This document shows, piece by piece, positions 7,201 through 59,724 of a stretch of 64,000 nucleotides of DNA (positions are counted from its first letter, which is position 1; each line of letters opens with the position of its first letter). Source of the DNA: Mustelus asterias (Eukaryota). The notes under the pieces are model-generated. The model did no database searches and was not told where the DNA came from. It saw only the letters and a list, made by a program, of their open reading frames with translations. Location of the stretch: positions 11,966,001-12,030,000 of the forward strand of contig NC_135825.1 in the NCBI RefSeq assembly GCF_964213995.1, read 5' to 3'. A program made the position numbers and the translations under genes.

Positions 7201-7268
7201 TCACAGGGTTATTTGTTGTTTCCGAACAACAGCAACAACTTCAATATTCTTCCATGTTGAATACATCT
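7201..7268 (-). CDS. Gene A putative last (cytoplasmic) exon, (E)MYSTWKNIEVVAVVRKQQITL*
   Basis: Acceptor ttctaatag, in frame with the phase-1 end of the TM exon, 125-nt intron; no independent support. Confidence 0.35.
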
Positions 7269-10200
7269 CTATTAGAATGTGCAGGATACCAGAATCAGAG
7301 ATGTTTGTTGATTGCAGCAAATTAGGTTCTCTTTATATTCTTCAGAAAATGATTGTAATATAACAAAATGATTTGGGGGAAACAGAAACTCACCCTTGTC
7401 GATTCGCCTCCGGTACAAAAGTAGAGAAACAGCGAACACCACAAGAATGGCCCCCAGCACCCCGAGCACAATGTAAATCAGACTGTGACACAGAGAATAG
7501 GAAATGAGCAGTGTTGGACTTTACAATCATAGAAAGTTTACAGCACAGAAAGTGACCACTTGGTCCATCATGTCTGTTGTGTCTAAAAACCGGCCCCCCA
7601 GTGCAGTCCCATTCTCCAGCATTGTGTCCATTGCCCTGCAGATTATCCAGACATCTCTGAAATGAGTTGAGTGTTTCTGCCTCTACCACCCTTTCAGAAA
7701 TCTGCAGCCCTCTGGGTGAAAACACTTTTCCTCATCTCTCCTCCCATCTTTCTACCAATTTCTTTAAATTTATGCTCCCGAGTCACTGACCTCTCTGCTA
7801 AAGTAAACTGGTCCTTCCCGCCCACTCTATCTGGGCTGCTTTTAATGTTGTCCATCTCAATCAATTCTCCCCTAAACCAAGGACAACAACCCCAGCCGAC
7901 CAATGTTTTCTTCTTGGCTGCAATTTTCCAGTCCTGGCAACATCCCTGTAAGTCTCCTCTCTGATACATCCTTTCTGTCATGAGGTGACCAGAACTGCTC
8001 ACAGTGCTCAAGTTATGGCCTAACTCATATTTTATATAGTTCCAGCATAACCTTTCTGACCTGAAATTCCATACCTTGGCTAATGAATGAAAGGATTCCA
8101 TGTGCCTTCTTAACCACCTTATCGACCTGTCCTGCTACCTTCAAGGACCTCTGGGCATTCACTCCTAGGATTTTCACTTCCTCTATATCCCCCAGTATCC
8201 TCCCATTTATTGTCTAACCATTTGCTTTGTTTGACCTGCTCAAATGCATCACCTCACCCTTCTCTGAGTTGAATTCCATTTGCCACTTTTCTGCCCACCT
8301 GACCAGTCCATTGATATCTTCCTGCAGCCGATAGCAATCCTCCTCGCTATCTACTGCATTGGTAATTTTCATTACATTACATCTAAATCATGAATATATG
8401 CCAGAGAAAGCAGGGGACCGAGCACTGAGCATTGGAAACAGCCTTCCAGTCACAAAAACAGCCATCAACAATCATCCTTTGTTTCCTGCCACAATTGATT
8501 CTTGGCCATTTGTTCAAGGAAGTGGGTTTTGAAATTATACATTCATGACCTTTGGATGGTCTAAAGAATTTTACAATCTGGGAAGTATTTTTAGACAATC
8601 ACCACTGTTGTGATATGGGAGATGTGGAAGCCAATTTGCTCACAGCAAAATCTCAGAAACAGCAATGAACTTTGACCAGATCAATATTGGCCATTTCTTC
8701 AGAGATCTCCTTGTCGGCTTTCTCTGTAGATAAGAAGTGACCTGCTGCGTATTTCCAGCAGCTTTTTCATCATTTTGATGTTTAGTTGGTATTTTTTCCT
8801 CATTGCCATTGTAACCTCCGCATTAACACAGCAGCCTGAGCACGCACCCTAATGACATCACATCAAATCAACCCTTTTTAAAACTCGCACCTTCATTATG
8901 AAGCGAACACAACAACATCCCGCCAAGGTTTCTGATCTGAGAGTTATTGAAAAATGATGCCCAGTCTCCCGGATCGTCAGAGACTGGACATATGACCCAA
9001 GATGTGTGTCAGAACCCTGCAGATGACGCAACATGATGACCTCCATGGGAATTGCCTGGGACGTTGGAACTTCCAACGGACAACTCTGCTGTACCCTGAG
9101 TCCCTCTGTGAAAATCTTCAGCTCTGGGTAAGAGTCAGACACTTCAAACAATTCCATGGGGCTTAACTGGATAGTTACCCAGGAAATGTTAGACTGAAAG
9201 AATCAAGTTTAATTCCTGGGTAATCACAGAACTGACCCCCGAATAATCACACTGACCCCCTGGAGTCCCCCCAATCCTCTGATGAACCCCCTGACACACC
9301 AACTATCACCCCACACCCCGACTATCCCATCTGACCTTGTGACGACGCCACAACCTGAGCCAATCCGATTACTCTCACAGACTACTCTTTGCACCCACCA
9401 CTAGCTTACCCAAGGTCCAAATCAGATTAGCCCCCAAACCAGGCTACCCCTGCCAATCTGACCCGATTACCATCCTATTCATCTACCACCTCATCAACCT
9501 CCTACCACACCCAACTGCCACCCTCCACATCTACCACCTCACCTATCTGCAACCCTACCCATCTCACACACCTATGACCTCCCACAACTGTCTTCTCACC
9601 CACCTACCACCATTGCCTCCTACTACCAACACATCGATACACCTGTCTCCCGATCCATCGTTCACCCGACCCACCTGTGGTCCTACTGAGTTGCGATGGA
9701 ATTCTCCGAGGGACGCTGCGCTCCACAGTTCTGGAGAATCTGGACTTGGAAGATCAGGCAAGAAATGTGGAGCTGAGTCGAGGGTGGAAAGCTTCAAGCG
9801 GAGTGGCAATCCAACAATGATTGCTGCTCTGTGACTGGCCCAGGACAATAAATTACATCCATTCTCACGCCAAAGTTGTTAAAGAGGATTTAATCACTCA
9901 CACAGAAGCCATGTCATTTAAACACTAACAATAAAAACAGCGTACCTTTCAGCAGGTTTGGAGTTTGGAATTGACGAATGCATTGACGATACCGTTAAAA
10001 CTTCACAAGAATTTTCAGGTCCGACTGAAAGAAGGAAACAACATTCAGATCAGCCTCATTTTCATTGTCGTGAACCGAGAGAGTCACATTGTCAAATGGC
10101 ACTTCGACCTGAGGGAGAACCACGTTGAGGGAGCACCTCTTCTTGGGATGTGGTTATTGCTGTTTAGGTCAGCAATTATTGCCCATCCCTAATTGCCCTG

Positions 10201-13200
10201 TGAAGATGTTCATGAGATGCCTCTTGAACCGCTGCAGTCCACGTGGTGTAGGTACACCCACAGTGCAGTGAGGGAGGGAGCACCCATCGTGTCTATGCCA
10301 GTCAAACACAATTGTCTTTCCAGCACGTGGCCCATAGCTTTGTGTGCCTTGGCATCACGAGTGCACATCAAAATATTTCTTAAATGTTATGAGGGTCTCT
10401 GAGACACCAGGAAAATTTGCCTATTCCTCTTGGAAGAGGGCCATGTAATCATTTACATTTAGCTCAAAGGACGTGTGGATCAGCAGTTCAACCAGACAAT
10501 AGCACCGTCAACAGCAGAGCGCAATCTCCGTGCTGTACAGTGATATCAACCCCTTTCTCGGAAGGAGAATTTGAACTCACAACCCATTGGTTTCAGAAAT
10601 CAGGCTGCGACCAACTGAGCCCCTTCTGACACTGACATATTTGAATATTAAACATTCAAACTGGTTAAAGTCCTCATTAATTCAGGACTATCGTTAGTGT
10701 TTATGTTAACACTGAGTAATTCAGTGTTTAGAACATGGAATTCTGAGATTTTGAGCAGCATTTTGTGATGATAGAATTTTTCGGCAAAGAAGGAAATTTG
10801 GTCCATTGCCCTCCATCGCTATGAAAGAATTTGCCATTTAGAATCAGAGAATCCATGCAGCGCACAAGGAGGCCATTTGGCCCATCGAGTCTACAACGAC
10901 ACTCCCATTGTCGTGTCTTTTCCCCAAATCCTCCTAAATGTCTGCTCCTTTTTAGCTTCCCTTGTGAAAGCTGTTATTTATTCTGTTTCTCACACAATCC
11001 ATATCTTAATAATCATTTGCATCAATAAAATTCTCCCAATTTCTCCCGCTGTCCATGTTGTGATGATCTTAACTGTATTCTCTCCAGTATTCACTCACTT
11101 ACTCCTGGAAATAATTCGTCTCAATTTATCTTATCAAAGCCTCTAATAATTTTGAATAGATTTAGCAGATCATTTCCTTCTATTCTAATGATTCTTTGCC
11201 GGTGTTAGCTGTTGGTAGCACTCTTGTGTCTGCAGCCACAAGGTTCTGTGTTCTCGCCCTACTCTTGGACTCAAAAATCAAAGCTGACACTCCTGTGCAG
11301 TACTGAGGAAGTGCTGCACTGTTGGAGGTGCTGCCTTTCGGATGGCTGTTGAACTGAGTCCCCAATCTGCCTGCTCTATGGGCAGCATGGTGGCACAGTG
11401 GTTAGCACTGCTGCCTCACAGCGCCAGAGACCCGGGTTCAAATCTGGCCTCGGGTGACTGGCTGTGTGGAGTTTGCACATTCTCCCCGTGTCTGCGTGGG
11501 TTTCCTCCGGGCACTCTGGTTTCCTCCCACAGTCCAAAGATGTGCGGATTAGGTGGATTGGCCAAGCTAAATTGCCCCTCAGTGTCAGGGGGAACTAGCT
11601 GGGGTAAATGCATGGGATTATGGGGATAAGGCCTGGGTGGGATTGACGTTGGCGGAGACTCGATGCGTCAAATGGTCTCCTTCTGCACTGTAAGATTCTA
11701 TGGATTCTATGAATCTATGGATGTATAAGATCGATGGCACTCGATCTCCTGAAGAAAAAACAGAAGCGTTATCCCAAAATCACCCGGTGATCCTTATCCC
11801 TCAATCAAAAACATGTTATCAGTTCATTATTTTGATCTTGCAGTGTGTAAATTGGCTGCTGTGTTTGGTTCCTGCCTGACAACAGTGACAGGGCTTCAAA
11901 AAGCATTTCATTGGTTGGAAAGTGCTTCGAGAAGTCAGGTGACTGTGAAAGTAAATGTAAGACATTCTTTCATTTTGTAAGTGAGACCTCTTAAGATGCT
12001 ATCATTTCACATCAACTCTTCAACTCTCGGGCCTTACCATTCATCCTAAAGCAAGAGTCATCAGCTAAAGATTGTTATTCACAATTTGATCTCCAAGAAA
12101 TGGGAACAGGAATGGTTAATGGAGACCTTGTCAGTCAAGTTCTATTTAATATTAATGGGATTACTGCAAAATTTACACATGTTTGGGGAATATTTTACGA
12201 TCCTGATATTTTCGATCAATATTTTAATCAGTAAGTTTGTTCCGAGTGGTTGAGGGACAAAGCAGAGTGAATTTTTGTCAGTTGCAGTCATTCAGAGAGA
12301 CATTAGGAAGCGAACCAGCAACCAGTATAGACAAACATCAATAAATATTTCACTGACCACATCGTATGTTTACACTATCACTTACCAACGTTGTTGATCT
12401 GTGTCACATAACTGCAATTCTCCCCTAATCCGTTGATCACTGAAATGTTAAACATTTCACTGGATTTTTCTCCCTGGTTATTTGAGGCTGTGCAGTAATA
12501 TTGATGATGTTGCTGTGTGAAGGATTGACAATGTAGATCCAGTTTATTGGTGTCAGAGATCTTTGAATCTTCGGACGGGGTCTTTTCATACCATGTGTAC
12601 TGAATGGGAAGTGATCCCTGGACAGACTCACAGGAGGCGGACACTGAGCCCCCAGAACATGAGGCATTTGGTGGTGATAGAAATTTAAGTTCAGGAACAG
12701 ACACAGGTTCTGTGGGAAAAAGACAATCATTCATGGATTTTCACAGTAACCTCATTGCAGTGTGAATGGAAGCCTACTTGTGACACTAATTTAAAAAAGC
12801 TTTAACTTTAAACTTTAAAATTTTAAACATAAGAATTACCAAAAAATTAAATAATTTCATATTACCAATATTTCAACACCTCACCCAGGGTGTGAGGAGG
12901 AAGGGGAAGTGTTAGAGAGAGAGAGAGATGGCAGTGGGAACTTGCCGAATGCAGGTAGTATCTCTTGATTGCTGACATGGACAGCAGATATTCATGATCG
13001 CAGATTAGTTCGTAACAAGCATTGGAGTGTGACCTGAGATAGTATCGAGTGATCCACCCCTGCTGCCAGTTGGAATAGGGAATTTGGCGCTCAGCCAAAT
13101 CTCCATTCACAGCAGCGGGACTGGATAATTCCAGCTGCGGACGAGTTCGGTGAAATTTGGCCATTGTTTGTATTTGTATTTAACATTTAACAGTAAGTAA

Positions 13201-16200
13201 CATTTAACATTTAAGTGTGAATACTGTTTCAATTTGAGGGTGGGGTTTTATGGCCTCGAATAAGCGAGACTGTAAAATCCCGGCCAAGGTCAACAGACAT
13301 TTCCGTTGTCTGCCCCACACCCGCTCCGATACCATGGCGGGCGAGGCAGTAAAATTCTGACGTAAGTACCATCCAAAGGACATGAGCTGGGAGATAGAAG
13401 CTATCCACTGGCAGCAACTGGATTAGTTAATTGGGGAAACTGGCTTGAACTGGTCGTTTTGTACTGAGTCCCTTTGTTCTTGAACATGTAAATTCAGACA
13501 TTCTCAGGGCAACCAGCACTGGAGTCTGACTCCGACTGAGTCTGGAGGTTTAATGAGCTGAAGGAATTTACTACGCGAGAAGAAGTGAGCTGTTGGTGAA
13601 TATCTGGTGAGTATCTAGGAAGTGGTCAAGGTCTATTTTCCATCCATCGGGAGCATGGGTGTGGTTCCTGCCAACTTGTTAACCAGGCGAGCGGGTTCCA
13701 AGGTGCAATAAATCTGACCCCATCTCTCTGGATCATTACTCTGGGCCTCTGAATTACAATTCCTCCAACATAATCATTGTGCTAACTACCCTCTAGCTCC
13801 AGACCCTACACTGCTGCGGAGCCTCGGGATATCGGAGCTGTCAATGTCTCCCCCCAGATAAAGCACCGATCACGCATTTGAGTCGAGAGTAATAACGATA
13901 ATCACTGAGAACAATGTACCGTCAGATATTTGTAGCTTTACAGGAAATATTGAAAGGAAGCCATGCTTATGAACACCACAGCTGTACCATCCTGCATCTC
14001 CTGAATGAAGATCCTCCACAGTAACAACAAATGATCTTTGTGTCTTGTGATCTGTGATCGACATTCTCCCTCGCCGTCCATCTGGATCGTCTGATTTTAC
14101 CAAAACAGAGCACTGACGACTCCAAGATTTCACATGGGACTGGGACAATTTGTCATAGTGACAATCTATAGTGATCGATCTTCCCAAAACTCCTGTTACT
14201 TTATTTTTTGCCCACAAGGCACTTGGAGCTGAAAAGACAACAGGTCAAAAGTTGAACTGAAAATAATTGCTCAATACAAACAGATATATTTCAATAGGAA
14301 TTACCACTGTGTTCAGATAAATCTTTCCAATACATCTTCTAATGCAATTGGATACTTCCTTGTTTGAGATCATTGGGCACAGTGAATATGTGCTTCCTGC
14401 GGATTGATAATTAGACAACCATATTGAGATTGTACACCAAGCCCTTTATAAAACAAGACCCTGAGTGGTTCCATTAATCTTTTAGTCCTGGTTGGGACCT
14501 GTTGGGTTCACTACAGGTGTGTGGTAATTCATTATTTTCATTTTGTACAATTGAAGCACGGTTCCTTCACAGCCAGCTCCTGGAGTTATTGTATTCTCAA
14601 ACAGCAATTGTCAGACAGCAGATTGTCTGCTCATGATCACGTTGCTCTTCGAGGGAGCTTCGTGCTCACAAATTGGTGCTGAGCTTCCTACATCACAACA
14701 ATGGCCCTGAATCAGTCCCAGCATTGACCAGAACGGACTTTAAAACTATCCTGAAGTTGTGAGAAGTGAAAAATAAATGCAATTCTATTTTTATTAAAAT
14801 TGCTTTGAACGACCAATCGAACTAAACCTGTGAGCATTCAACCAGACATTCATTTAAAAATTAGTTGAATCTTTTGAAACTTAAAGTGATATTTACCAAT
14901 GTTGCTGATTTGTGTTAAGTAACTGCAATCATTCTCTGAAATGTGGATCACTGACACTGTAACCATTTCACTGGATTTTTCCCCCTGGTTATTTGAGGCT
15001 GTGCAGTAATATTGATGATGTTGCTGTCTGAATGATTGACAATGTAGATCCAGTTTATTGGTGCCAGAGATCTTTGAATCTTCAGACGGGGTCTTTTCAT
15101 ACCATGTGTACTGAATGGGAAGTGATCCCTGGACAGACTCACAGGAGACGGACACTGAGCCCCCAGAACATGAGGCATTTGGTGGTGATAAAAATCTAAG
15201 TTCAGGAACAGACATGGGTTCTGTCGGAAAAAGACAATCATGAATGGATTTTCAAAGTAACTTTATTGCAGTGTTAATGTAAGCCTAATTGTGACACAAA
15301 TTTTAAAAAGCTTTAACTTTAAACTTTGAAACTTTAAACTTGAGAATGACCAAAAAATTCAATAGTTTCATATTACCAATATTTCTACACCTCATCCAGG
15401 GTGTGAGGAGGAAGGGAAATTGTTAGAGAGAGAGAGAGAGATGGCAGTGGGAGCTTGGCCGAATGCAGGTAGTATCTGTTGCTCGCTGTCACGGACAGCA
15501 GATATTCATGATAGCAGATTAGATAGCAACAAGCATTGGAGTGTGACCTGAGATAGACTGTGGACGTTTACTGAGATAATGGAGACTGAAAATATCTATC
15601 TAAAAATCTAATCTTGACCTGAAATCTCTGATATCGAGTGATCCGCCCCTGCTGCCAGTTGGAATAGGGAAATTGGCGCTCAGCAAAACTCAGTTCACAG
15701 CAGCGGGACTGGATAATTCCAGCTGTGGACAGGTTCGGTGAAATTCGGCCATTATTTGTATTTGTATTTAACATTTAACAGTAAGTACCATTTAACATTT
15801 AAGTGTTTAAAGTCGTTGGCGGGGATTTATGGCCTCGAATGAGCGAGACTGGATAATCTTGCCCAATGTCAACAGACATTTCCGTTGTCTGCCCCACACC
15901 CGCTCCGATACCATGGCGGGGCGAGGCAGTAAAATTCTGACGTCTCATCCAAAGGGCATGAGCTGGGAGATAGAAGCTATCCACTGGCAGCAACTGGAAT
16001 AGTTAATTGGGGAAACTGGCTTGAACTGGTCTTTTTGTACTGAGTCACTTTGTTTTTGAACATATAAATTCAGACATTCTAAATGCAACTAGCACTGGAG
16101 TCTGCCTTCAACCGAGTGTGGAGGTTTAATGAGCTGAATGAATTTACTGCAGGGGAAGAAGTGAGCTGTTGGTGAGTATCTGGTGAGTATCCGGGAAGTG

Positions 16201-19200
16201 GTCAAGGTCTATTGTCCAGGCATCGGGAGCATGGGTGGGGTCCTTGCCAACTTGTTAATCAGGAGAGCCGGTTCCTAGGTGCAATAAATCTGACCCCATC
16301 TCTCTGGATCATTACTCTGGGCCTCTGAATTACAATTCCTCCAACATAATCATTGTTCTAACTGCCCTCTCGCTGCCAGACTCTGCACTGCTGCGGAGCC
16401 TCGGGATATCGGAGCTGTCAATGTCTCCTCCCAGATAAAGCACCGATCAGACATTTCAGTCGCGAGGAAGAAAGACAATCAATGAGAACAATGTACCGTC
16501 AGATATTTGGAGCTTTACAGGAAATATTGAAAGGAAGCCGTGCTTATGAATACCACAGCTGTACCATCCTGCATCTCCTGAACGAAGATCCTCAATCGTA
16601 ACAACAAATGATCTTTGTGTCTTGTTATCTGTGATCGACATTCTCCCTCGCCGTCCATCTGGATCGTCTGATTTTACCAAAACAGAGCACTGACGACTCC
16701 AATATTTCACATGGGACTGGGGCAATTTGTCATAGTGACAATCTATAGTGATCGATCTTCCCAAAACTCCTGTTACTTTATTTTTTGTCCACAAGTCACT
16801 TGGAGCTGAAAAGACAACAGGTCAAAAATTGAACTGAAAATAATTGCTTCATACAAACAGATATATTTCAATAGGAATTACCACTGTGTTCAGAGAAATC
16901 TCTCCAATACATCTTCTAATGCAATTGGATACTTTCTTGTTTGAGATCGTTGGGGTCATTCAATATGTGCTTCCTGCGGATTGATAATTAGACAACCATA
17001 TTGAGATTGTATACACAGCCCTTTATAAAGCAAGACCCTGAGTGGTTCCATTAATCTTTTAGTCCTGGTTGGGACCTGTTGTGTTCACCACAGGTGTGTG
17101 GTTATTCTTTATTTTCATTTTGTACAATAGAAGCACGGTTCCTTCACAGCCAGCTCCTGGAGTTGTTATATTCTCAAACAGCAATTGTCAGACTGCAGAT
17201 TGTATGCTCATCATCACATTGCTCTTTGAGGGAGCTTATTGCTCACAAATTGGTGCTGAGCTTCCTACATCACAACAATGGCTCTGAATCAGTTCCAGCA
17301 TTGACCAGAACGGACTTTAAAACTGTCCTGAAGTTGTGAAAAGTGAAAAACGAATGCAATTCTATTTTTATTAAAATTGCTTTGAACGACCAATAGAACT
17401 AAACCTGTGATCAATTCAGACAGACATTAATTTAGAAATTAGTTGAATCTTTTGAAACTTAAGGTGATATTTACCAATGTTGCTGATTTGAGTCACATAA
17501 CTGCAATCATTCTCTGAAATGTGGATCACTGACCCTGTAACCATTTCACTGGATTTTTCTCCCTGTTTATTTGAGGCTGTGCAGTAATATTGATGATGTT
17601 GCTGTCTGAATGATTGACAATGGAGATCCAGTTTATTGGTGCCAGAGATCTTTGAATCTTCAGACGGGGTCTTTTCATACCATGTGTACTGAATGGGAAG
17701 TGATCCCTGGACAGACTCACAGGAGATGGACACTGAGCCCCCAGAACATGAGGCATTTGGCGGTGATAAAAATTTAAGTTCAGGAACAGACACGGGTTCT
17801 GTGGGAAAAAGACAATCATGAACGGATTTTCACAGTAACTTCATTGCAGTGTTAATGTAAGCGTACTTGTGACACAAATTTTAAAAAGCTTTAACTTTAA
17901 ACTTTGAAACTTTAAACTTGAGAATGACCAAAAAATTAAATAGTTTCATATTACCAATATTTCAACACCTCATCCAGTGTGTGAGGAGGAAGGGAAAGTG
18001 TTAGAGAGAGAGAGAGATGGCAGTGGGAGCTTGGCCGAATGCAGGTAGTATCTATTGATTGCTGTCGCGGACAGCAGATATTCATGATAGCAGATTAGAT
18101 AGCAACAAGCATTGGAGTGTGACCTGAGATAGACTGTGGATGTTTGCTGAGATAACGGAGACTGAAAATATCTATCTAAAAATCTAATCTTGACCTGAAA
18201 TCTCTGATATCGAGTGATCCGCCCCTGCTGCCAGTTGGAATAGGGAATTTGGCGCTCAGCCAAATCTCCATTCACAGCAGCGGGACTGGATAATTCCAGC
18301 TGTGGACAGGTTCGGTGAAATTCGGCCATTATTTGGATTTGTATTTTTCATTTAACAGTAAGTACCATTTAACATTTAAGTGTGAGTACTGTTTAAAGTC
18401 GAGGGCGGAGATTTATGGTCTCGAATGAGCGAGACTGGAAAATCTTGCCCAATGTCAACAGACATTTCCGTTGTCTGCCCCACACCCGCTCCGATACCAT
18501 GCTGGGCGAGGCAGTAAAATTCTGACGTATCATCCAAAGGGCATGAGCTGGGAGATAGAAGCTATCCACTGGCAGCAACTGGAATAGTTAATTGGGGAAA
18601 CTGGCTTGTACTGGCCTTTTTGTACTGAGTCCCTTTGTTTTTGTACATATAAATTCAGTCATTCTCAGTGCAACCAGCACTGGAGTCTGCCTTCAACCGA
18701 GTGTGGAGGTTTAATGAGCTGAAGGATTTTACTGCAGGGGAAGGAGTGAGCTGTTGGTGAATATCTGGTGAATATCCAGGGAGTGGTCAAGATCTATTGT
18801 CCAACCATCGGGAGCATGGGTGTGGTTCCTGCCAACTTGTTAACCAGGAGAGCGCGGTCCAAGGTGCAATAAATCTGACCCCATCTCTCTGGATCATTAC
18901 TCTGGGCCTCTGAATTACAATTCCTCCAGCATAATCATTGTGCGAACTGCCCTCTCGCTGCCAGACTCTGCACTGCTGTGAAGCCTCGGGATATCGGAGC
19001 TGTCAATGCCTCCTCCCAGATAAAGCACCATCAGACATTTCAGTCAAGAGTAATAAAAATAATCACTGAGAACAATGTACCGTCAGATATTTGTAGCTTT
19101 ACAGGAAACATTGAAAGGAAGCCGGGCTTATCAATACCACAGCTGTACCATCCTGCATCTCCTGAGTGAAGATCCTCCATAGTAACAACAAATAATCCTT

Positions 19201-22200
19201 GTGTCTTGTGATCTGTGATCGACATTCTCCCTCGCCGTCCATCTGGATCGTCTGATTTTACCAAAACAGAGCACTGAACACTCCAAGATTTCACATGTGA
19301 CTGGGACAATTTGTCATAGTGACAATCTATAGTGATCGATCTTCCCAAAACTCCTGTTACATTATTTTTTGCCCACAATGCACTTGCAGCTGAAAAGACA
19401 ACAGGTCAAAAATTGAACTGAAAATAATTGCTTAATACAAACAGATATATTTCAATAGGAATTACCGCTGTGTGCAGAGAAATCTCTCCAATACATCTTC
19501 TAATGCAATTGGATACTTTCTTGTTGAGATCGTTGGGCACATCAAATATGTGCTCCCTGCAGATTGATAATTAGACAACCATATTGAGATTGTATCCCAA
19601 GCCCTTTATGAAGCAAGACCTTGAGAGGGTCCATTAATCTTTTAGTCCAGGTTGGGACCTGTTGTATTTACCACAGGCGTGTGGTTATTGTATATTTTCA
19701 TTTAGTACAATAAAAGCACGGTTCCTTCACATCCGGCTCCTGGAGTTATTATTTTCTCAAACAGCAATTGTCAACCAGCAGATTGTCTGCTCATGATCAC
19801 ATTGCTCTTTGAGGGGTCTTATTGCTCACCAATTGGTGCTGAGCTTCCTACATCACAACAATGGCTCTGAATCAGTTCCAACATTGACAAGAGTGATAAG
19901 GGAAATATGAAGCCATCAGGCAGGAGATTAGAGGCGTAAATTGGAAGGAGGCACTCTCGAGGAAAAGTACCGAAGTAGGGTGGCAGATTTTCAAGGAATG
20001 TTTGTCTGGAGTTCTGCATGACAACGTTCCGATGAGACAGGGAGGTGTTTGTAGGTTACGGGAACCGTGGTTCACGAAAGCTGCACTGAACCTAGTCAAA
20101 AAGAAAAGGAAAGCGTACAAAAGGTTCAGAGAGCTAGGCAATGATAGCGATCTAGATGAGGATACGGCTTGTAGGAAGGGACTTAAGAAAGAAATTAGGA
20201 GAGCCAGAAGGGGTCACGAGAAGACCTTGGCAGATCAGATGAAGGAGAACCCTAATGCGTTCTATAAATATGTGAAGAATAAAAGGATGAGATGTGTAGG
20301 AATAGGACCTATAAAATGTGAAGGTGAGAAAGTCTGTACAGAACCGGAAGAAATATCAGAGGTGCTTAATGAATCTTTTACCTCGGTATTCACGGTAGAA
20401 AAAGACCTGGGTGGTTGTACGACAGGATTGAGGCGGACTGAAAAGATTGAGTGCATTAATAAAGAGGATGTATTGGAAATTTTGAATAGCATCAAGATAG
20501 ATAAGTCGCCGGGACCGGATGGGATGTACCCCAGGTTACTGTGGGAGGTGAAGGAAGAGATTGCAGAGCCTCTGGCGATGATCTTTGCGTCGTCGATAGA
20601 GACGGGAGAGGTTCTGGAGGATTGGAGGATTGCAGATGTGGTTCCTATATTCAAGAAAGGGAATAGGGATAGCCCAGGAAATTACCGGCCGGTGAGTCTA
20701 ACCTCAGTGGTTGGTAAGTTGATGGAAAAGATCCTGAGGGACAGGATTTATGAACATTTAGAGAAGTTTAGTATGCTCAAAAGGAGTCAGCACAGAACAA
20801 AGAACAAAGAACAAAGAACAGTACAGCACAGGAAACAGGCCCTTCGGCCCTCCAAGCCTGTGCCGCTCCTTGGCCCAACTAGACCAATCGTTTGTATCCC
20901 TCCATTCCCAGGCTGCTCATGTGACTATCCAGGTAAGTCTTAAACGATGTCAACGTGCCTGCCTCCACCACCCTACTTGGCAGCGCATTCCAGGCCCCCA
21001 CCACCCTCTGTGTAAAAAACATCCCTCTGATATCTGAGTTATACTTCGCCCCTCTCACCTTGAGCCCGTGACCCCTCGCGATCGTCACCTCCGACCTGGG
21101 AAAAAACTTCCCACTGTTCACCCTATCTATCCCCTTCATAATCTTGTACACCTCTATTAGATCTCCCCTCATTCTCTGTCTTTCCAGGGAGAACAACCCC
21201 AATTTACCCAATCTGTCCTCATAGCTAAGACCCTCCATACCAGGCAACATCCTGGTAAACCTCTGCACTCTCTCTAACGCCTCCACGTCCTTCTGGTAGT
21301 GCGGCGACCAGAACTGGACGCAGTACTCCAAATGTGGCCTAACCAGCGTTCTATACAGCTGCATCATCAGACTCCAGCTTTTATACTCTATACCCCGTCC
21401 TATAAAGGCAAGCATACCATATGCCTTCTTCACCACCGTCTCCACCTGTGTTGCTACCTTCAAGGATTTGTGGACTTGCACACCTAGGGTCCCTCTGTGT
21501 TTCTATAGTCCTGATGACTCTGCCATTTATTGTATAACTCCTCCCTACATTATTTCTTCCAAAATGCATCACTTCGCACTTATCCGGATTAAACTCCATC
21601 TGCCACCTCTCCGCCCAATTTTCCAGCCTATCTATATCCTGCTGTATTGCCCGACAATGCTCTTCGCTATCCGCAAGTCCAGCCATCTTCGTGTCATTCG
21701 CAAACTTGCTGATTACACCAGTTACACCTTCTTCCAAATCATTTATATATATCACAAATAGCAGAGGCCCCAGTACAGAGCCCTGCGGAACACCACTGGT
21801 CACAGACCTCCAGCCAAAGGCAAATCGTGCCTTACGAGCCTGGTGGAGTTCTTTGAAAATGTGACTAAACACATTGATGAAGGAAAAGCGGTAGATGTGG
21901 TTTACATGGACTTCAGCAACGCGTTCGATAAGGTCCCCCATGCAAGACTTCTCGAGAAAGTGAGAGGGCATGGGATCCAAGATGCTGTTGCCTTGTGGAT
22001 CCAGAACTGACTTGCCTGCAGAAGGCAGAGAGTGGTTGTAGATGGGTCTTTTTCTGAATGGAGGTCGGTCACCAGTGGAGTGCCCCAGGGATCTGTTCTG
22101 GGACCCTTGCTGTTTGTCATTTTCATAAATGACCTGGATGAGGAAGTGGAGGGATGGGTTGGTAAGTTTGCCGATGACACGAAGGTTGGTGGTGTTGTGG

Positions 22201-25200
22201 ATAGGTTGGAGGGATGTCAGAAGCTGCAACGTGACATAGATAGGATGCAAGACTGGGCGGAGAAGTGGGAGATGGACTTCAACCTGGATAAATGTGTAGT
22301 GGTCCATTTTGGCAGGTCAAATGGGATGAAGGAGTATAATATAAAGGGTAAGACTCTTAGCAGTGTAGAGGATCAGAAGGACCTTGGAGTCTGGGTCCAT
22401 AGGACTCTTAAATCGGCCTCGCAGGTAGAGGAGGTGGTTAAGAAGGCGTATGGTGTGCTGGCCTTCATCAAGTGAGGGATTGAGTTTAGGAGTCAGGAGA
22501 TAATGATGCAGTTTTATAAGACCCTCGTCAGACCCCACTTGGGGTACTGTGCTCAGTTCTGATCACCTCATTACTGGAGGGATGTGGAAATGATTGAAAG
22601 GGTGCAGAAAAGATTTACAAGGATGTTGCCTGGATTGGTTGGCATGCCTTAGGAGGATAGGTTGAGGGAGCTCGGTCTTTTCTCCTTGGAGAGACGAAGG
22701 ATGAGAGGTGACCTGATAGAGGTGTACAAGATGTTGAGAGGTATAGATCAGGTGGATTCTCGGAGGCTCTTTCCCCGGGCTGAAATGGCTGCTACGAGAG
22801 GACACAGGTTTACGGTGCTGGGGAGTAGGTACAGAGATGTCAGGGGTAAGTTTTTCACTCAGAGGGTGGTGGGTGAGTGGAATCGACTGCCGTCAGTGGT
22901 GGTGGAGGCAATCTCGATAGGGTCTTTTAAGAGACTTCTGGATGAGTACATGGGACTTAATAGGATTGAGGGTTATAAGTAAGCCTATATGTAAGCTTAG
23001 GTAGGTAGGGACATGACCGGTGCAACTTGTGGGCCGAAGGGCCTGTTTGTGCTGTATTTTTACTTTGTTCTATGTTCTATGAACTGACTTTAAAACTGTC
23101 CTGAAGTTGTGAAAAGTGAAAAATAAATGCAATTCCATTTTTATTGAAATTTCTTTGAACGACCAATAGAACTAAACGCGTGAGCAATGCAAACAGACAT
23201 TAATTTAAAAATTAATTGAATTTTCTGAAGCTTAAAGTGATAGTTACCAATGTTGCTGATTTGTGTCACATAACTGCAATCATTCTCTGAAATGTGGATC
23301 ACTGACACTGGAACCATTTCACTGGATTTTTCTCCCTGGTTATTTGAGGCTGTGCAGTAATATTGATGATGTTGCTGTTTGAAGGATTGACAATGTAGAT
23401 CCAGTTTATTGGTGTCAGAGATCTTTGAATCTTCAGACGGGGTCTTTTCATACCATGTGTACTGAATGGGAAGTGATCCCTGGACAGACTCACAGGAGAC
23501 GGACACGGAGCCCCCAGAACATGAGGCATTTGGTGGTGATAGAAATTTAAGTTCAGGAACTGACACAGGTTCTGTGGGAAAAGACAATCATCAACGGATT
23601 TTCACAGAAACTTCATTGCAGTGTTAATGTCAGCCTACTTGTGACAACAATTAAATAAATGTTTAACATTAAACTTCAAAACTTTGAACTTTCGAATGAC
23701 CAAAAAATTAAATAGTTTCATCATACCAATATTTCTACACCTCATCCAGGGTGTGAGGAGGAAGGGAAAGTGTTGGAGAGAGAGAGAGATGGCAGAGGGA
23801 TCTTGGCCGAATGCAGGTAGTATCTATTGATTGCTGTCACGGACAGTTAGTAACAAGCATTGAAGTGTCACCTGAGATGGACTGTGGATGTTTACTGAGA
23901 TAACGGAGACGTAAATATCTTTCTAAAAATCTAATCTTGACCTGAATTCTCCGATATCGAGTGATCCGCCCCTGCTGCCAGTTGGAAGAGGGAATTTGGC
24001 GCTCGGCCAAATCTCCATTCACAGCAGCGGGACTGGATAATTCCAGCTGCGGAGTTTGGTGAATTCCAGCCATTGTTTGTATTTGTATTTATCATATAAC
24101 AATAAATACCATGTAACATTTAAGTGCGAGTACTGTTTAAAGTCTATGGCGGGGTTTTATGGCCTCGAGTGAGCGAGACTGGAAAATCCTGCCAAAGGTC
24201 AACAGACATTTCCGTTGTCTGCCCCACACCCGCTCGGATACCGGGTAAATATGTGGGGGTAGGGCCTGGGTGGTCGGTGCAGATTCGATGGCCGAATGGC
24301 CTCCTTCTGCACTGTAGGGTTTCTATAATAAGAAAAAAAAATGGCGGGCGAGGCAGTAAAATTCTGACGAAAGTATCAACCAAAGGGCATGAGCTGGGAG
24401 ATAGAAGCTATCCACTGGCAGCAACTGGAATAGATAATTGGGGAAACTGGCTTGAACTGGCCTTTTTGTACTGAGTCACTTTGTTTTTGAACACATAAAT
24501 TCAGACATTCTCAGTGCAACCAGCACTGGAGTCTGCCTTCAACCGAGTGTGGAGGTTTAATGATCTGAAGGAATTTTCTACAGGAGAATAAGTGAGCTGT
24601 TGGTGAGTATCTGGTGAGTATCCGGGAAGTGGTCAAGGTCTATTGTCCAGGCATCAGGAGCAAGGGTGGGGTTTTCTCCAACTTGTTAACCAGGAGTGCA
24701 GTGTCCAAGGTGCAATAAATCTGACCCCATCTCTCTGGATCATTACTCTGGGCCTCTGAATTACAATTCCTCCAACATGATCATTGTTCTAACTGCCCTC
24801 TAGCTGCCAGACTCTGCACTGCTGCGGAGCCTCAGGATATCGGAGCTGTCAATGTCTCCTCCCAGATAAAGCACCGATCAGACATTTCAGTCGAGAGTAA
24901 TAAAGATAATCACGGAGAACAATGTACCGTCAGATATTTGTAGCTTTACAGGAAATATGGAAAGGAGGCCGGGCTTATCAATTCCACAGCTGTACCATCC
25001 TGCATCTCCCGAACGAAGATCCTCCATCGTAACAACAAATAATCCTTGTGTCTTGTTATCTGTGATCGACATTCTCCCTCGCCGTCCATCTGGATCGTCT
25101 GATTTTACCAAAACAGAGCACTGAACACTCCAAGATTTCACATGTGACTGGGACAATTTGTCAGAGTGACAATCTATAGTGATCGATCTTCCCAAAACTC

Positions 25201-46200: not shown

Positions 46201-46305
46201 GGATAAACCATGCACGAGACTTAATCTAACACTCATCATCTCGGGATCCAGTTTTGTCCCTTACTCACCAGGCAGAGAAAAGATGAAAAGAATCAGAATC
46301 CACAT
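7201..46305 (-). CDS. Receptor gene A (spliced, 16 exons): CD300/CMRF35/pIgR-like type-I receptor, leader + 6x(V + C2-like) + stalk + TM + short tail, about 1360 aa
   Basis: Exons joined by GT-AG introns in compatible phases; V exons have CD300/pIgR-type motifs (GRSITINC, KYWC, ITDNK, DAGxYxCGI); C2-like exons have YTWY and YYCTASN; neutral TM. Confidence 0.8.
7394..7482 (-). CDS. Gene A transmembrane exon, LIYIVLGVLGAILVVFAVSLLLYRRRIDK
   Basis: Acceptor ctctgtgtcacag, donor G|gtgagt; hydrophobic helix then RRR; phase 2 matches the stalk exon. Confidence 0.88.
7528..8497 (-). mobile_element. Decayed CR1-clade LINE 3' fragment
   Basis: Frameshifted RT and 3' remnants (RKQRMIVDG, RGELIE, RVVEAETL); boundaries approximate. 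Confidence 0.7.
9946..10024 (-). CDS. Gene A stalk exon, (V)GPENSCEVLTVSSMHSSIPNSKPAE
   Basis: Acceptor tttccttctttcag, donor AG|gtacg; phase 1 in, phase 2 out; Ser/Thr/Pro-rich. Confidence 0.8.
11205..11970 (+). mobile_element. Old LF-SINE-like element interrupted by a younger HE1-type SINE
   Basis: Core gctgacactcctgtgcagtactgaggaagtgctgcactgttggaggtgc and tail aaattggctgc...acaacagtgac recognised from memory; boundaries approximate. Confidence 0.45.
11380..11711 (+). mobile_element. tRNA-derived SINE (HE1/V-SINE type)
   Basis: A box TGGCACAGTGG, B box GGTTCAAATC, core tgtgtggagtttgcacattctccc, TTCTATG-type tail. Confidence 0.85.
12386..12709 (-). CDS. Gene A C2-like exon 6 (membrane-proximal, divergent 3' end)
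   Basis: 324 nt; cag acceptor, G|gtaagt donor; EPVSVPE...YYCTASN...NCSYVTQINNV. Confidence 0.9.
13920..14228 (-). CDS. Gene A V exon 6
   Basis: 309 nt; ttttcag acceptor, G|gtacat donor; APSALWAK...DAGWYSCG. Confidence 0.88.
14897..15220 (-). CDS. Gene A C2-like exon 5
   Basis: 324 nt, open, phase 1-1. Confidence 0.88.
16497..16805 (-). CDS. Gene A V exon 5
   Basis: 309 nt, open, phase 1-1. Confidence 0.88.
17475..17798 (-). CDS. Gene A C2-like exon 4
   Basis: 324 nt, open, phase 1-1. Confidence 0.88.
19081..19389 (-). CDS. Gene A V exon 4
   Basis: 309 nt, open, phase 1-1. Confidence 0.88.
19889..23080 (+). mobile_element. 5'-truncated CR1-clade LINE, present in one array unit only
   Basis: RT motifs KSPGPDG, NYRPVSLTS, GVPQGSVLGP, FADD; TGTTCTA-type tail; other units are empty here (cattgaccagaac). 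Confidence 0.92.
20794..21814 (-). mobile_element. Second CR1-clade LINE fragment nested antisense in the first
   Basis: (AGAACAA)n tail at 20794; minus-strand RT C-terminus; host reading resumes at caaaggcaaatcg. Confidence 0.9.
23248..23571 (-). CDS. Gene A C2-like exon 3
   Basis: 324 nt, open, donor G|gtaact. Confidence 0.88.
24243..24340 (+). mobile_element. Short 3' SINE fragment, unit-specific
   Basis: HE1-type tail ggccgaatggcctccttctgcactgtaggg plus A-run; absent from sister units. Confidence 0.75.
24928..25236 (-). CDS. Gene A V exon 3
   Basis: 309 nt, open, phase 1-1. Confidence 0.88.
25886..26209 (-). CDS. Gene A C2-like exon 2
   Basis: 324 nt, open, phase 1-1. Confidence 0.88.
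26554..26889 (-). mobile_element. HE1-type SINE, unit-specific
   Basis: A/B boxes and core on the minus strand; absent from sister units. Confidence 0.85.
27836..28144 (-). CDS. Gene A V exon 2
   Basis: 309 nt, open; W>C change near the N-terminus (ALCAK). Confidence 0.88.
29257..29580 (-). CDS. Gene A C2-like exon 1
   Basis: 324 nt; acceptor tttctttcccacag, donor G|gtaaat. Confidence 0.9.
30218..30585 (+). mobile_element. DeuSINE (SacSINE1-like) element
   Basis: tRNA-like head (GGTTCGAATCC) and Deu-like core ggaaatctaccatcctttcctggtctggcctacatgtg, recognised from memory. Confidence 0.6.
31829..31847 (+). promoter_or_regulatory. ERV primer-binding site, tRNA-Ser-like
   Basis: TGGCACAGTCGGCATGGAT versus the expected Ser PBS TGGCG(T/C)AGTCGGCAGGAT, 2 nt after the LTR. 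Confidence 0.7.
32477..33837 (+). pseudogene. gag: ERV gag (one frameshift near 33250)
   Basis: PPPY-like motif LPPY; two knuckles CYNCGQRGHFARDC and CSHCNKYGHTEAAC. Confidence 0.85.
35462..35506 (-). ncRNA. Minimal hammerhead ribozyme motif (mirror copy)
   Basis: Reverse complement of the motif at 36272-36317. Confidence 0.6.
36272..36317 (+). ncRNA. Minimal type-I hammerhead ribozyme motif
   Basis: cac-CTGAAGA-a-GGGGC ttgca GCTCC-GAAA-GCT-T-gtg: core boxes, stem II, palindromic helix III, short helix I. Confidence 0.65.
37842..39317 (+). pseudogene. env: ERV env (frameshifted SU, open TM subunit)
   Basis: Signal-like MYVIVYVTVLLCVVA; basic site RRRIVTR; ISD-like QQTRYAVDYQLAQQGGVC-X6-C; TM helix. 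Confidence 0.88.
40411..40941 (+). mobile_element. CR1 3' fragment shared by both arms
   Basis: LFSLERRRLRGDLIEVYK; mirror at about 60381-60912. Confidence 0.85.
41577..41897 (-). CDS. Gene A exon 2, N-terminal V domain (V1)
   Basis: 321 nt; acceptor gtctcctcag; VSGALWAE...KYWCHGWTERC...DAGFYRCGI; keeps the extra C-C' cysteine pair typical of CD300/pIgR. Confidence 0.92.
42585..42953. mobile_element. Short Penelope-like fold-back insertion, left arm only
   Basis: 14-bp TSD ATTCTTATAGACAG at 42571-42584 and 42954-42967; inverted 3' ends; empty site near 56574-56587. Confidence 0.88.
42815..42860 (+). ncRNA. Minimal hammerhead motif (mirror copy at 42640-42685, minus)
   Basis: cac-CTGAAGA-a-GGGGCT cag AGCCTC-GAAA-GCT-T-gtg. 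Confidence 0.62.
43316..44585 (-). mobile_element. 5'-truncated CR1 LINE, left arm only
   Basis: Open 371-aa RT ORF at 43412-44527; GAACATA-type tail; empty site near 55868. Confidence 0.92.
45241..45570 (+). mobile_element. Older HE1-type SINE shared by both arms
   Basis: A/B boxes and core; mirror at about 54883-55212. Confidence 0.8.
46269..46305 (-). CDS. Gene A exon 1, leader MWILILFIFSLP
   Basis: Kozak-like acaATG; 37 nt; strong donor G|gtgagt; splices in frame to VSGALW. Confidence 0.88.
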
Positions 46306-48594: not shown

Positions 48595-48905
48595 CATAGA
48601 ATTTTGCAGTGCAGATGGAGGCCATTCGGTCCATCGCGCCGACACAATGCCACCCAGATCCTATCCCCATAACTCCACATATTTACCCTGCTGATCCCCT
48701 GACACAATGGAGCAATTTAACATGGGCAATGAATCTAACCTTCACATCTTTGGATTGTGGGATGAAACCGGAGCGCCTGGAGGAAATTCACACAGACCAC
48801 GGGGAGGAAATTGTGCAAACTCCACACTGCCAGTCACCCAAGTTCGGAATTGAACCTGGGCACCTGGCACTGTGAGGCAGCAGTGCTAACCACTGTGCCA
48901 CCATA
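48595..48905 (-). mobile_element. HE1-type SINE shared by both arms
   Basis: Mirror at about 51301-51612. Confidence 0.8.
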
Positions 48906-49229
48906 TTGCCCGGTAAAACCTCCTCAGGCATTTTATGACATCAGACAAGTGTTGTTGCTGAGGCAAAGATTAGATCAAAGAGACTGGTCAGTTTTAGGGA
49001 GAGGTTGCTGGAGTTTTCAATCTCGACAATTGGAAACAGGAGGGACTAGGAGGAAGGGTCTGAGAGTCTGAGAGTTGGCACTCAGCCTCTGCAACAACAT
49101 CATTACACTTCATCGCAGGTCAAGGCTGCTCCCACAACAATTTTAAAGGAAATATGTGGTCTGCAAAAGAGGAAGTGAAACCACTTGTAATAACTCAGAA
49201 AGCCACTGGAAAGGCATGGTGTTTTATTT

Positions 49230-53200: not shown

Positions 53201-53899
53201 TGGAAAATCCAGGTCAATTATTCAATCCAGGAGAGAGTGAAACTCCAGAGTTTATAATTGTTCACATTCTGGGCCAGGGAGGCTGATGTTACGAAACTGA
53301 ACATTCTGTGGCCTGTTTATTTGGTATTTATTTGGTAAATGTCACAATTTCATCAAAGTAAGGGCGGGTTTAAGAAAGATCCACCATTTTCTCAAAGCTA
53401 ATGGAGGAGGCGTAAAAAGCAGCCAATAACTTGTAATTAGTTTGATATCTCTTCATTGTCTCAGTTCATTGGCCAGTTTACACACTGTGGTACTTTCAGC
53501 AAATTCTGGGCCTTTCTGTTTTCAGCAATAGTGCAGGGAGTGTCAGGGTGAATCACACCTCCCATGATATCAACAACCACACTGAGCGACACTATCAAAG
53601 CCGGACAGTAACTGTCCACAGGTCACCAAAGGTGCAGATGTAGAGCTGTGCCTGCTGGAACAAGGAGATCAGCAGCTTAAGGGGATCTTTAGAGCTGGCA
53701 CAACCAGTGATAGCAGTGGCCAGCTGGGACATCCGTCCTGGAGCTTTCTGAAGGGTGGAATTTCCTGAGGCCTGGCTTGCTGCTTTCTTCAATCTTATTT
53801 CAATTCCGTATCAGAGTTTATTGGATCCGCCTTTCAACATCTCAACAAAGAGCTGGGTGACAGACGATAAATACTGATCGAAACATTGCCAAGATAACA

Positions 53900-53936
53900 A
53901 TGTGGATTCTGATTCTTTTCATCTTTTCTCTGCCTG
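53900..53936 (+). CDS. Paralog B exon 1, leader MWILILFIFSLP
   Basis: Same as the gene A leader; donor G|gtgagt. Confidence 0.85.
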
Positions 53937-54401
53937 GTGAGTAAGGGACAAAAATGGATCCCGAGATTGATGAGTGTTGGATTAAGTCTAGTGCATGGTT
54001 TATACCGCAGAGATATTTAAATACTTGGAGACATGCAAAGCTACAAAAACTCAGCAAAAATAAATTCATGAATTTGTATGATATTTGTAGCTATTTTGTT
54101 GATAGTATTGTACCACAGAAATATTTACCCAGCAAATAATAAACGGCATTATTGATTGTGAATATAAATTAACCTATTTATTTTTGTTAAAAAGCTACAT
54201 GATTAATCGAATTAAAATGCAGAATCAGCACATTTCAGTCCAGTAAAAGTTAACTTGTTAATGTAGTTTCATGCTCAATATATCCTGGAGACTGGAGGGT
54301 TTGATTGGCTCAGTTGTTTGGAGTGCAATTCGGAATGATTCCAATGGCAGGGGTTCAATCCTCAGAGCGGCTGCGGTAGTTTATGGAAATCTGCCTCCTC
54401 A

Positions 54402-59402: not shown

Positions 59403-59409
59403 GTTTCAG

Positions 59410-59724
59410 GTGCATTGTGGGCAGAAATGAAAGTCACAAGAATTGTGGGAAGATCGTTCTCAATAAATTGCAGTTATGATGGAAAATACAAACAAAACGT
59501 GAAATATTGGTGTCACGGTTGGACTGAACGGTGCTCACATTTAGTGAGAACGGATGATCCAAATGGATGGCGAGGGAGAATGTCGATCACAGATAACAAG
59601 GCACAAGGAATATTTGTTGTTACGATGAAGGATCTTCGCTCAGGAGATGCAGGATTGTATCGCTGTGGAATTGATACACCTGGCCTTGATCCAAAGTTTT
59701 TGTTGGAGCTGCAAATATCTTACA
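59410..59724 (+). CDS. Paralog B exon 2, V domain (predicted new acceptor)
   Basis: GALWAEMKVTRIVGRSFSINC...KYWCHGWTERC...DAGLYRCGI; open frame; weak donor A|gtatat. Confidence 0.75.

What the first reader, a model, noticed from the sequence alone, without database searches (positions are those of the whole stretch)
7201..46305. 12-Ig-domain CD300/pIgR-like receptor built from six alternating V/C2 modules
Seen: all 12 Ig exons are open, of fixed length (V 321 or 309 nt, C2 324 nt) and keep their splice sites, while introns carry indels and TE insertions, suggesting selection. Known: mammalian CD300 has one V domain, and pIgR has up to five V domains without C2. Inference: an unusually long, multivalent receptor of cartilaginous fish, possibly binding polymeric Ig, lipids or pathogens. 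I do not recognise this architecture from described families.
Basis: partly seen in the sequence, partly recalled or inferred. Interest (0 to 1): 0.85.

Follow-up and report, generated by a model that had tools for sequence, protein, structure and literature searches.

The report
Twelve-Ig-domain shark MDIR immune receptor gene
This is a real, intact shark gene for a very long cell-surface immune receptor with twelve antibody-like domains, but it belongs to a receptor family (MDIR) already described in skates, so it is a long new member and not a new kind of molecule.

Summary
On the minus strand lie a leader exon (ATG at 46305), one 321-nt V exon, five 309-nt V exons and six 324-nt C2 exons. 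They alternate strictly, and all are open, phase 1-1 and bounded by AG/GT. Introns carry indels and retroelements.

A stalk exon (10024-9946), a TM exon (7482-7394) and a first cytoplasmic exon (1146-1094) follow, and the tail runs off the window.

The exons are 51-69% identical to clearnose-skate "modular domain immune-type receptor 3", which is V-V-C2-V-C2-TM. Automated models with 12 Ig domains in Mustelus asterias and 18-19 in Amblyraja radiata are already public.

V resembles CD300f/pIgR and C2 resembles FCRL5. Absence of indels and stops, and dN/dS of 0.28-0.68, argue for selection.

RNA-like contigs show C2→V and V→C2 splice joints, but at 90-95% likeness, so not provably from this gene. 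Whether one mRNA carries all 12 domains is untested.

The scan's notes list similar genes elsewhere in this genome.

The parts
46269..46305 (-). Leader exon: ATG at 46305, MWILILFIFSLP plus 1 nt, GTGAGT donor, phase 1
   Evidence: the same leader peptide starts the Mustelus asterias models P0001 and P0152
41577..41897 (-). V1 exon, 321 nt. V-set domain with four Cys, including the CD300/pIgR-type second pair (YWC...ERC)
   Evidence: borders, translation; Pfam V-set, E 4.5e-12; CD300f 1e-20; pIgR 4.4e-43 summed
29257..29580 (-). C2-1 exon, 324 nt
   Evidence: class (run on C2-5 and C2-6)
27836..28144 (-). V2 exon, 309 nt. Short 'v' type: 4-residue deletion and loss of the first Cys of the extra pair
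25886..26209 (-). C2-2 exon, 324 nt
24928..25236 (-). V3 exon, 309 nt
23248..23571 (-). C2-3 exon, 324 nt
19081..19389 (-). V4 exon, 309 nt
   Evidence: (51% identity to MDIR3 V domains, E 4e-34)
17475..17798 (-). C2-4 exon, 324 nt
   Evidence: its 3' border is one side of the C2->V joint in runs X1 and X2
16497..16805 (-). V5 exon, 309 nt
   Evidence: (Pfam V-set, E 3.6e-11)
14897..15220 (-). C2-5 exon, 324 nt
   Evidence: Ig_3, 30.1 bits; FCRL5, 3.4e-39 summed; 69% identity to MDIR3 C2, E 5e-46
13920..14228 (-). V6 exon, 309 nt
   Evidence: both of its borders appear in splice joints of run X2
12386..12709 (-). C2-6 exon, 324 nt. Most divergent C2 (89.5-92.9% nt identity to the others)
   Evidence: run X2 holds a 148-nt contig with 1 differing letter
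9946..10024 (-). Membrane-proximal stalk exon, 79 nt (VGPENSCEVLTVSSMHSSIPNSKPAE), AG/GT, phase 1 in and phase 2 out
7394..7482 (-). Transmembrane exon, 89 nt (LIYIVLGVLGAILVVFAVSLLLYRRRIDK). No charged residue in the membrane span
   Evidence: this 29-residue stretch is identical to the TM of P0152
1094..1146 (-). First cytoplasmic exon, 53 nt (DTNDISHGRDNDNLIDNQ), AG/GT. Later tail exons are not in the window
59404..59724 (+). V1 exon of a head-to-head paralog lying in the inverted duplicate arm (37328-49038 mirrored at 64000-51173). Context, not part of the gene

Best explanation
[quoted passage not shown] In this gene an internal V+C2 exon pair of about 2.6 kb was duplicated in tandem, giving leader-V1-(C2-V)x5-C2-stalk-TM-tail, that is 12 in-frame Ig exons. 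All copies have since been kept intact by selection. Shown: the exon anatomy, the family relationship, the duplication history, and the lack of disabling changes. Inferred: the product sits on leukocytes. The fast-evolving membrane-distal V1 is the main ligand-binding tip. The repeated modules extend its reach or add binding sites. The uncharged TM, together with a tail like that of paralog P0152 (which carries two ITIM-type motifs), makes it inhibitory. Every Ig exon is a symmetric phase-1 cassette, so shorter isoforms are equally possible. A 12-domain mRNA is plausible but not demonstrated.
For: Anatomy: 12 of 12 Ig exons are open with AG/GT borders and fixed lengths. Leader, stalk, TM and first cytoplasmic exon have consensus borders and no junction codon is a stop, giving 1356 codons inside the window. 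Family: V is 51-52% and C2 is 69% identical to skate MDIR3. MDIR3 has the same domain types. 46 of 47 long homologues come from 18 elasmobranch species, and a Callorhinchus protein named MDIR2 lies in a related cluster. Domain affinities: V matches CD300f at 1e-20 and pIgR at 4.4e-43 summed; C2 matches FCRL5 at 3.4e-39 summed. Duplication: repeat units are 93-97% identical in exons and about 90-94% in introns, and direct repeats are offset by one unit. Selection: pN/pS is 0.28-0.38 for C2 and 0.68 for V2-6. There are 0 indels against about 6.4 expected (P about 0.002), and the same number of random substitutions would leave all 11 repeated exons open in only 0.3% of 5000 simulations. V1 tip: V1 is 88.2% identical to the paralog's V1 while flanking DNA is 96.8%, with pN/pS 2.0. 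Transcription of this kind of array: in run X2 depth sits on the five exons and is about 0-3 in most intron bins away from repeats. There is a C2->V joint at 14229|17478 (X1 and X2) and a V->C2 joint at 15212|13922 with exactly the 10 letters expected between them. Tail: the TM matches P0152, whose tail reads ...SIVYASV...VTYATL....
Against: No transcript is tied to this gene. Most laid contigs are only 90-95% alike, and runs X1 and X2 are RNA only by the tool's guess. The two joints map as unit-skipping or backward, which is what paralogous or foreign transcripts would give. No database protein equals the window exons: the best Mustelus asterias models reach 97% on single exons, and a search with V1 found nothing in the 58-185 aa range. 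The ITIM exons are outside the window, so inhibitory signalling is by homology only. The V1 pN/pS excess is not significant on its own (Fisher p 0.13) and could reflect gene conversion. The indel and stop tests are rough. The described MDIR range of 1-6 Ig domains is recalled from the 2006 abstract, because the paper was not held.
Confidence: 0.75

Rival explanations
1. Cassette-exon locus: the 12 exons are a genomic reservoir. Normal mRNAs carry only a subset (2-6 Ig domains, as in typical MDIRs), chosen by alternative splicing among symmetric phase-1 exons.
For: All Ig exons are phase 1-1, so any subset keeps the frame. The commonest architecture among homologues is (V-C2)x3. The observed joints map as a unit-skipping C2-4->V6 and a backward V6->C2-5. 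An earlier scan note proposes the same idea (s1-892590).
Against: The odd mapping of the joints is expected from 90-95% alike paralogous or foreign contigs. Every unit shows purifying selection, so each must be used in some product. Automated models in two other species join 12-19 domains. This rival is compatible with the main explanation.
Confidence: 0.35
2. Shark counterpart of pIgR or an Fc receptor: a multivalent receptor for polymeric IgM or IgW, which would fill the reported absence of pIgR and FcR in cartilaginous fish.
For: V1 matches all five pIgR domains (4.4e-43 summed) and C2 matches FCRL5. NCBI names several relatives 'polymeric immunoglobulin receptor-like' or 'Fc receptor-like protein 5'. 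Akula et al. 2014 reported no pIgR or FcRL homologues in sharks (PMC4016189, passages read).
Against: pIgR has V domains only. The best single-domain match is CD300f (1e-20), not a pIgR domain (best stretch about 4.5e-09). The TM and tail resemble an ITIM-type paralog. There are no binding data, and database names are automatic.
Confidence: 0.1
3. Non-functional array or assembly artefact: a decaying duplicate, or an over-expanded repeat in the assembly.
For: The locus is a young, TE-rich, inverted-duplicated cluster. No exact protein or transcript match was found.
Against: 12 of 12 exons are intact, with P of about 0.002-0.003 under neutrality. pN/pS is below 1. The units differ from one another by 3-10% and carry private insertions, so they are not one copy assembled repeatedly.
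Confidence: 0.05

Closest known systems
MDIR3, modular domain immune-type receptor 3 of the clearnose skate (UniRef name of P0190; GenBank ABC86797.1 as listed in PMC3031540)
   Same: The two domain types and the family sequence signature are the same: V is 51-52% and C2 is 69% identical. V and C2 are intermixed, followed by a TM. MDIR3 has an ITIM-type tail, and the paralog P0152 has one too. Both belong to multigene families.
   Different: MDIR3 has 5 Ig domains (V-V-C2-V-C2); this gene has 12 in strict alternation. The internal V domains here have lost one Cys and 4 residues. The tail of this gene was not seen.
Mustelus asterias Gnomon models XP_ 'titin-like' (P0153, 1314 aa) and LOC144511684 (P0152, 1458 aa)
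   Same: Both have 12 Ig domains. P0153 has the identical order V-(C2-v)x5-C2. P0152 has the identical TM and a near-identical first cytoplasmic exon.
   Different: They are not the same gene. V1 is only about 73% identical, and there is no position-by-position correspondence of units. Both are automated predictions.
CD300 / CMRF35-like molecules (e.g. CD300f/CLM-1, PDB 6c74)
   Same: This is the best single-domain match of V1 (E 1e-20). V1 keeps the extra Cys pair typical of CD300 and pIgR V domains.
   Different: CD300 proteins have one V domain and no C2 (established knowledge).
pIgR (PDB 7jg2, 5d4k)
   Same: V1 aligns to all five pIgR domains. Both are tandem multi-Ig ectodomains.
   Different: pIgR has no C2 domains. 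There is no evidence here for Ig binding or transcytosis signals.
FCRL5 (PDB 9loc)
   Same: The C2 exon aligns to six FCRL5 domains and shares the GSLPIxY...YYCTAxN pattern.
   Different: FCRL proteins lack CD300-like V domains.

Membership tests
MDIR (modular domain immune-type receptors) | Ig ectodomains belonging to the MDIR sequence subfamilies | tested here: met
   V1 is 51% identical (E 2e-37), v-type V4 is 51% (E 4e-34) and C2-5 is 69% (E 5e-46) to skate MDIR3
MDIR (modular domain immune-type receptors) | Modular mixing of the domain types in variable number (1-6 described; recalled from the 2006 abstract, paper not held) | tested here: met
   The same V and C2 types as MDIR3 are mixed. 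The number, 12, exceeds the recalled range.
MDIR (modular domain immune-type receptors) | Type I membrane protein with either a charged TM residue or cytoplasmic ITIM(s), or neither | tested here: inconclusive
   Leader and uncharged TM were found. The tail beyond the first cytoplasmic exon lies outside the window. ITIM-type motifs were seen only in paralog P0152.
MDIR (modular domain immune-type receptors) | Membership of a large multigene family in cartilaginous fish | tested here: met
   There is a head-to-head paralog in the window. Five long Mustelus asterias models lie on one contig, and 46 of 47 long homologues come from elasmobranchs. Scan notes of neighbouring genes were not checked.
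CD300 | Single V-type Ig ectodomain | tested here: not met
   6 V and 6 C2 exons
CD300 | V domain with a second (C-C') disulfide | tested here: met
   V1 has both Cys. V2-V6 keep only one.
pIgR | Ectodomain made only of V-type domains | tested here: not met
   C2 exons alternate with V exons
pIgR | Binding of polymeric Ig and transcytosis | not testable with these tools
   No binding or expression data are available, and the tail is outside the window
FCRL | Ectodomain of C2-type domains without CD300-like V domains | tested here: not met
   C2 matches FCRL5 but alternates with V

The most novel reading that the evidence does not exclude
The array is a germline isoform generator. Twelve symmetric phase-1 Ig cassettes, whose V copies differ mainly in loop-like stretches, would be spliced in varying numbers and combinations, giving a repertoire of receptors of different length and specificity. 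Alternatively, the full 12-domain chain is a disulfide-stapled rod: each C2 has an odd fifth Cys, each internal V has an odd third Cys, and the stalk has one more. Such a rod could serve sharks as a multivalent receptor for polymeric Ig or lipids, a role thought to be missing in cartilaginous fish.
Probability: 0.15. Interest if true: 0.75.

Novelty: new member of a known kind. Interest (0 to 1): 0.38.

Why it matters
MDIRs have hardly been studied since 2006. My two searches that included the family's name, spelled out in the singular or the plural, found it in one open paper. Sharks were reported to lack pIgR and FcRL homologues (PMC4016189). This gene shows how far the family can be stretched by exon-pair duplication while all copies stay intact. 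It also shows that one chondrichthyan receptor family unites CD300/pIgR-type V domains and FCRL-type C2 domains, which are separate families in mammals. It gives concrete exons and unit-specific variants for long-read cDNA and binding tests. It does not reveal a new kind of molecule.

Tried and rejected
1. Exact source or orthologue. None of the five long Mustelus asterias models matches the window exon for exon (best 97%). P0153 shows no diagonal of unit-by-unit identity.

2. Transcript of this gene. The single read-laying run gave only short Logan contigs, and I could not assign any joint to this gene. A protein search with the V1 exon was blank, which says little given its length filter.

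3. Inter-domain disulfide idea. AlphaFold2 of the natural V-C2-v-C2 protein P0005, with an 11-sequence alignment, gave mean pLDDT 55.7 and pTM 0.32. That is too poor to judge domain contacts, so I ran no fold search.

4. Literature. The 2006 MDIR paper (PMC3701310) and the review PMC2823954 are not held. What I say of their content is recalled. From PMC3031540 and PMC4016189 I read passages only. PMC6795676 and PMC13428168 held nothing relevant. Searches found no paper on long MDIR, CD300-like or pIgR-like arrays in sharks. I did not ask for supplements; those of shark genome papers might list such genes.

5. Joined model. Exons were searched one by one.

6. Rejected readings. A pseudogene or an assembly artefact is unlikely. 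It is not a true CD300, pIgR or FCRL, because the defining architecture is not met.
Full report
OBSERVATION. A tblastn of one V and one C2 translation against the window found six V-like and six C2-like stretches on the minus strand between 12.4 and 41.9 kb, and a seventh V on the plus strand at 59.4 kb. I refined the borders. V1 is 41897-41577 (321 nt). V2-V6 are 309 nt each. C2-1 to C2-6 are 324 nt each. All 12 are open in a phase-1 frame, all 12 are preceded by a pyrimidine tract and AG, and all 12 are followed by GT.

A 37-nt leader exon starts at the ATG at 46305 (MWILILFIFSLP, then G|GTGAGT).

Pfam calls the V exons V-set (E 3.6e-11 to 4.5e-12). The C2 exons score as Ig_3 or Ig_2 at or just under the curated cut-offs.

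Using the tail of a homologue (P0152), I found three further exons, each with AG/GT borders:
- a stalk exon, 10024-9946;
- a TM exon, 7482-7394 (LIYIVLGVLGAILVVFAVSLLLYRRRIDK, uncharged);
- a first cytoplasmic exon, 1146-1094.

The remaining tail is not in the window. Read one at a time, none of the 15 junction codons is a stop, and the exons in the window add up to 4068 nt, or 1356 codons.

IS IT MORE THAN CHANCE?
- Repeated exons are 93-97% identical (C2-6 is 89.5-92.9%). Repeated introns are about 90-94% identical, and the first C2->V intron is much more diverged.
- pN/pS among copies is 0.68 for V2-6 and 0.28-0.38 for C2.
- The aligned repeat introns hold 16 small gap blocks. At that density about 6.4 would be expected in the 3489 copy-nt of repeated exons. 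None is seen (P about 0.002, a rough estimate).
- Placing the observed number of substitutions at random leaves all 11 repeated exons open in 0.3% of 5000 trials.
- The units differ from each other and carry private insertions, so they are not one copy assembled several times.

Introns hold retroelements:
- a retrovirus-like element (zinc-knuckle gag, RT, RNase H, integrase, TLV_coat-like env) at about 32.4-39.3 kb, in the V1->C2-1 intron;
- LINE-type RTs at 20-23 kb and at 43.4-44.5 kb;
- a Gypsy-like element at 2.5-6.5 kb, between the TM and cytoplasmic exons.

WHAT IT IS. A profile-free scan of 1.84 billion representative proteins with the C2-5 exon gave 1074 hits at E up to 0.001. The best was a 1254-aa protein with six matched stretches at 89% identity. 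That protein is Mustelus asterias XP_078098046.1.

Searching with it returned 47 long proteins at E up to 1e-20. Of these, 46 come from 18 elasmobranch species and one is hare FCRL5. One of the 46 is named 'Modular domain immune-type receptor 3' of the clearnose skate (P0190).

The window's exons compare with MDIR3 as follows:
- V1: 51% identical, E 2e-37;
- V4: 51% identical, E 4e-34;
- C2-5: 69% identical, E 5e-46.

A Callorhinchus protein named MDIR2 sits in the cluster of a more distant C2 hit.

I classified domains in 55 retrieved proteins. 52 contain both V and C2, and 3 have C2 only. Examples:
- MDIR3 is V-V-C2-V-C2-TM.
- (V-C2)x3-TM is the commonest form.
- The Mustelus asterias models P0153 ('titin-like') and P0152 have 12 Ig domains.
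- The Amblyraja radiata models P0155 and P0154 have 18 and 19.

All of these except MDIR3 are automated models, and several others are visibly fused neighbours, with internal leaders or TMs. None equals the window. The best single-exon identity is 97%, V1 is about 73% identical to P0153's V1, and there is no unit-by-unit diagonal. The window is therefore from a paralog or from a close relative of M. asterias.

Against solved structures, V1's best single-domain match is CD300f/CLM-1 (1e-20), and it aligns to all five pIgR domains (4.4e-43 summed). The C2 exon aligns to six FCRL5 domains (3.4e-39 summed) and to CD22 d6-d7 (7.4e-06). The family thus joins two Ig lineages that are separate in mammals.

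SURROUNDINGS. The window contains an inverted duplication: 37328-49038 is mirrored at 64000-51173 at about 96.5% identity. A head-to-head paralog therefore starts at about 53.9 kb on the plus strand, with its V1 at 59404-59724.

The two V1 exons are only 88.2% identical, while 800 nt of the adjoining intron are 96.8% identical. pN/pS is 2.0, which is not significant alone (Fisher p 0.13). This fits diversifying selection on, or gene conversion of, the membrane-distal domain.

TRANSCRIPTION. The run search found no holder on record as RNA. There were four small runs guessed to be RNA, with 5-6% of the words, and four runs of a third organism with 22-34%. I laid X1, X2, X5 and X7 on 12300-17900 at 90% likeness; all are Logan contigs.

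In X2, depth lies on the five exons (20-341 per bin), is 0-3 in the intron bins between 13422 and 17348, and is high in the repeat-rich bins. X5 and X7 cover introns too, so they look like DNA.

Two joints sit on exon borders:
- 14229|17478, in X1 and X2, joins a C2 3' end to a V 5' end.
- 15212|13922, in X2, has exactly 10 unmatched letters between the two sides. That is the number needed to reach the V 3' end and the C2 5' end.

Spliced C2->v and v->C2 molecules therefore exist in those samples. However, most contigs are 90-95% alike, and the joints map as unit-skipping or backward. They probably come from paralogs or another species. One X2 contig on C2-6 has 1 difference in 148 nt. Nothing shows all 12 exons in one mRNA. 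The V1 exon found no short database protein.

MECHANISM. Shown: a complete, selected, 12-Ig type I receptor gene of the MDIR family, made by tandem exon-pair duplication.

Inferred:
- It is expressed on leukocytes.
- V1 is the main binding tip.
- The repeated modules act as spacers or as extra binding sites.
- It gives inhibitory signalling. This rests on the TM, which is identical to that of P0152, and on P0152's tail, which carries SIVYASV and VTYATL.

Cys counts are odd in each C2 (5) and in most internal V domains (3), and the stalk has one more, which invites inter-domain disulfides. An AlphaFold2 model of a natural V-C2-v-C2 relative was too poor to test this (pLDDT 55.7).

NOVELTY. The family and its modular V/C2 principle were described in 2006. 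I could not open that paper. Its range of 1-6 domains is recalled, and its existence and accession numbers are cited from PMC3031540. Long arrays are already in automated annotation. Five literature searches found no open paper that discusses them. Akula et al. 2014 stated that sharks lack pIgR and FcRL homologues (passages read). I rate this a new, unusually long member of a known kind, of moderate interest.

Noticed in passing
window 37328-49038 and 51173-64000: A large inverted duplication at about 96.5% identity. It creates a head-to-head paralog whose leader starts at 53900 (+) and whose V1 is at 59404-59724 (+). The retrovirus-like element is shared by both arms, so it was inserted before the duplication.
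   Followed up: partly
window 41577-41897 versus 59404-59724: The two V1 exons are 88.2% identical while the adjoining intron is 96.8% identical. pN/pS is 2.0 (4.5 synonymous and 32.5 non-synonymous differences), Fisher p 0.13. This could be diversifying selection or gene conversion.
   Followed up: partly
window 57919-59403: In the paralog, a LINE-type RT ORF (57919-59325) ends just upstream of the V1 exon. The 150 nt upstream of that exon no longer resemble the corresponding stretch of the gene studied here, so the paralog's acceptor region has been replaced.
   Followed up: partly
window about 32400-39320 (+): A retrovirus-like element with gag zinc knuckle, RT/RNase H, integrase and a TLV_coat-like env ORF lies in the V1->C2-1 intron. 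Its pol region is interrupted by a 929-nt self-complementary stretch at 35428-36351.
   Followed up: partly
window 2543-6518 (+): A Gypsy-like LTR retrotransposon with two long ORFs (protease-RT, then RNase H-integrase) sits in the intron between the TM exon and the first cytoplasmic exon.
   Followed up: partly
window 12710-12860, 15221-15478 and 17799-17900: A very high-copy short repeat lies directly upstream of the acceptor of C2-2 to C2-6, but not of C2-1. Depths reach the millions, and there are many loose ends at 17824 and 17862-17879. It may have been co-duplicated with the unit.
   Followed up: no
window 9564-9848: The C-termini of two Mustelus asterias gene models (P0001 and P0152) match this repeat-like stretch on opposite strands. 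Those models therefore probably end in a transposable-element fragment.
   Followed up: partly
window 28144-27836 (V2): V2 has Cys where the other V exons have Trp (PSALC versus PSALW). This gives it an even Cys count, unlike V3-V6.
   Followed up: no
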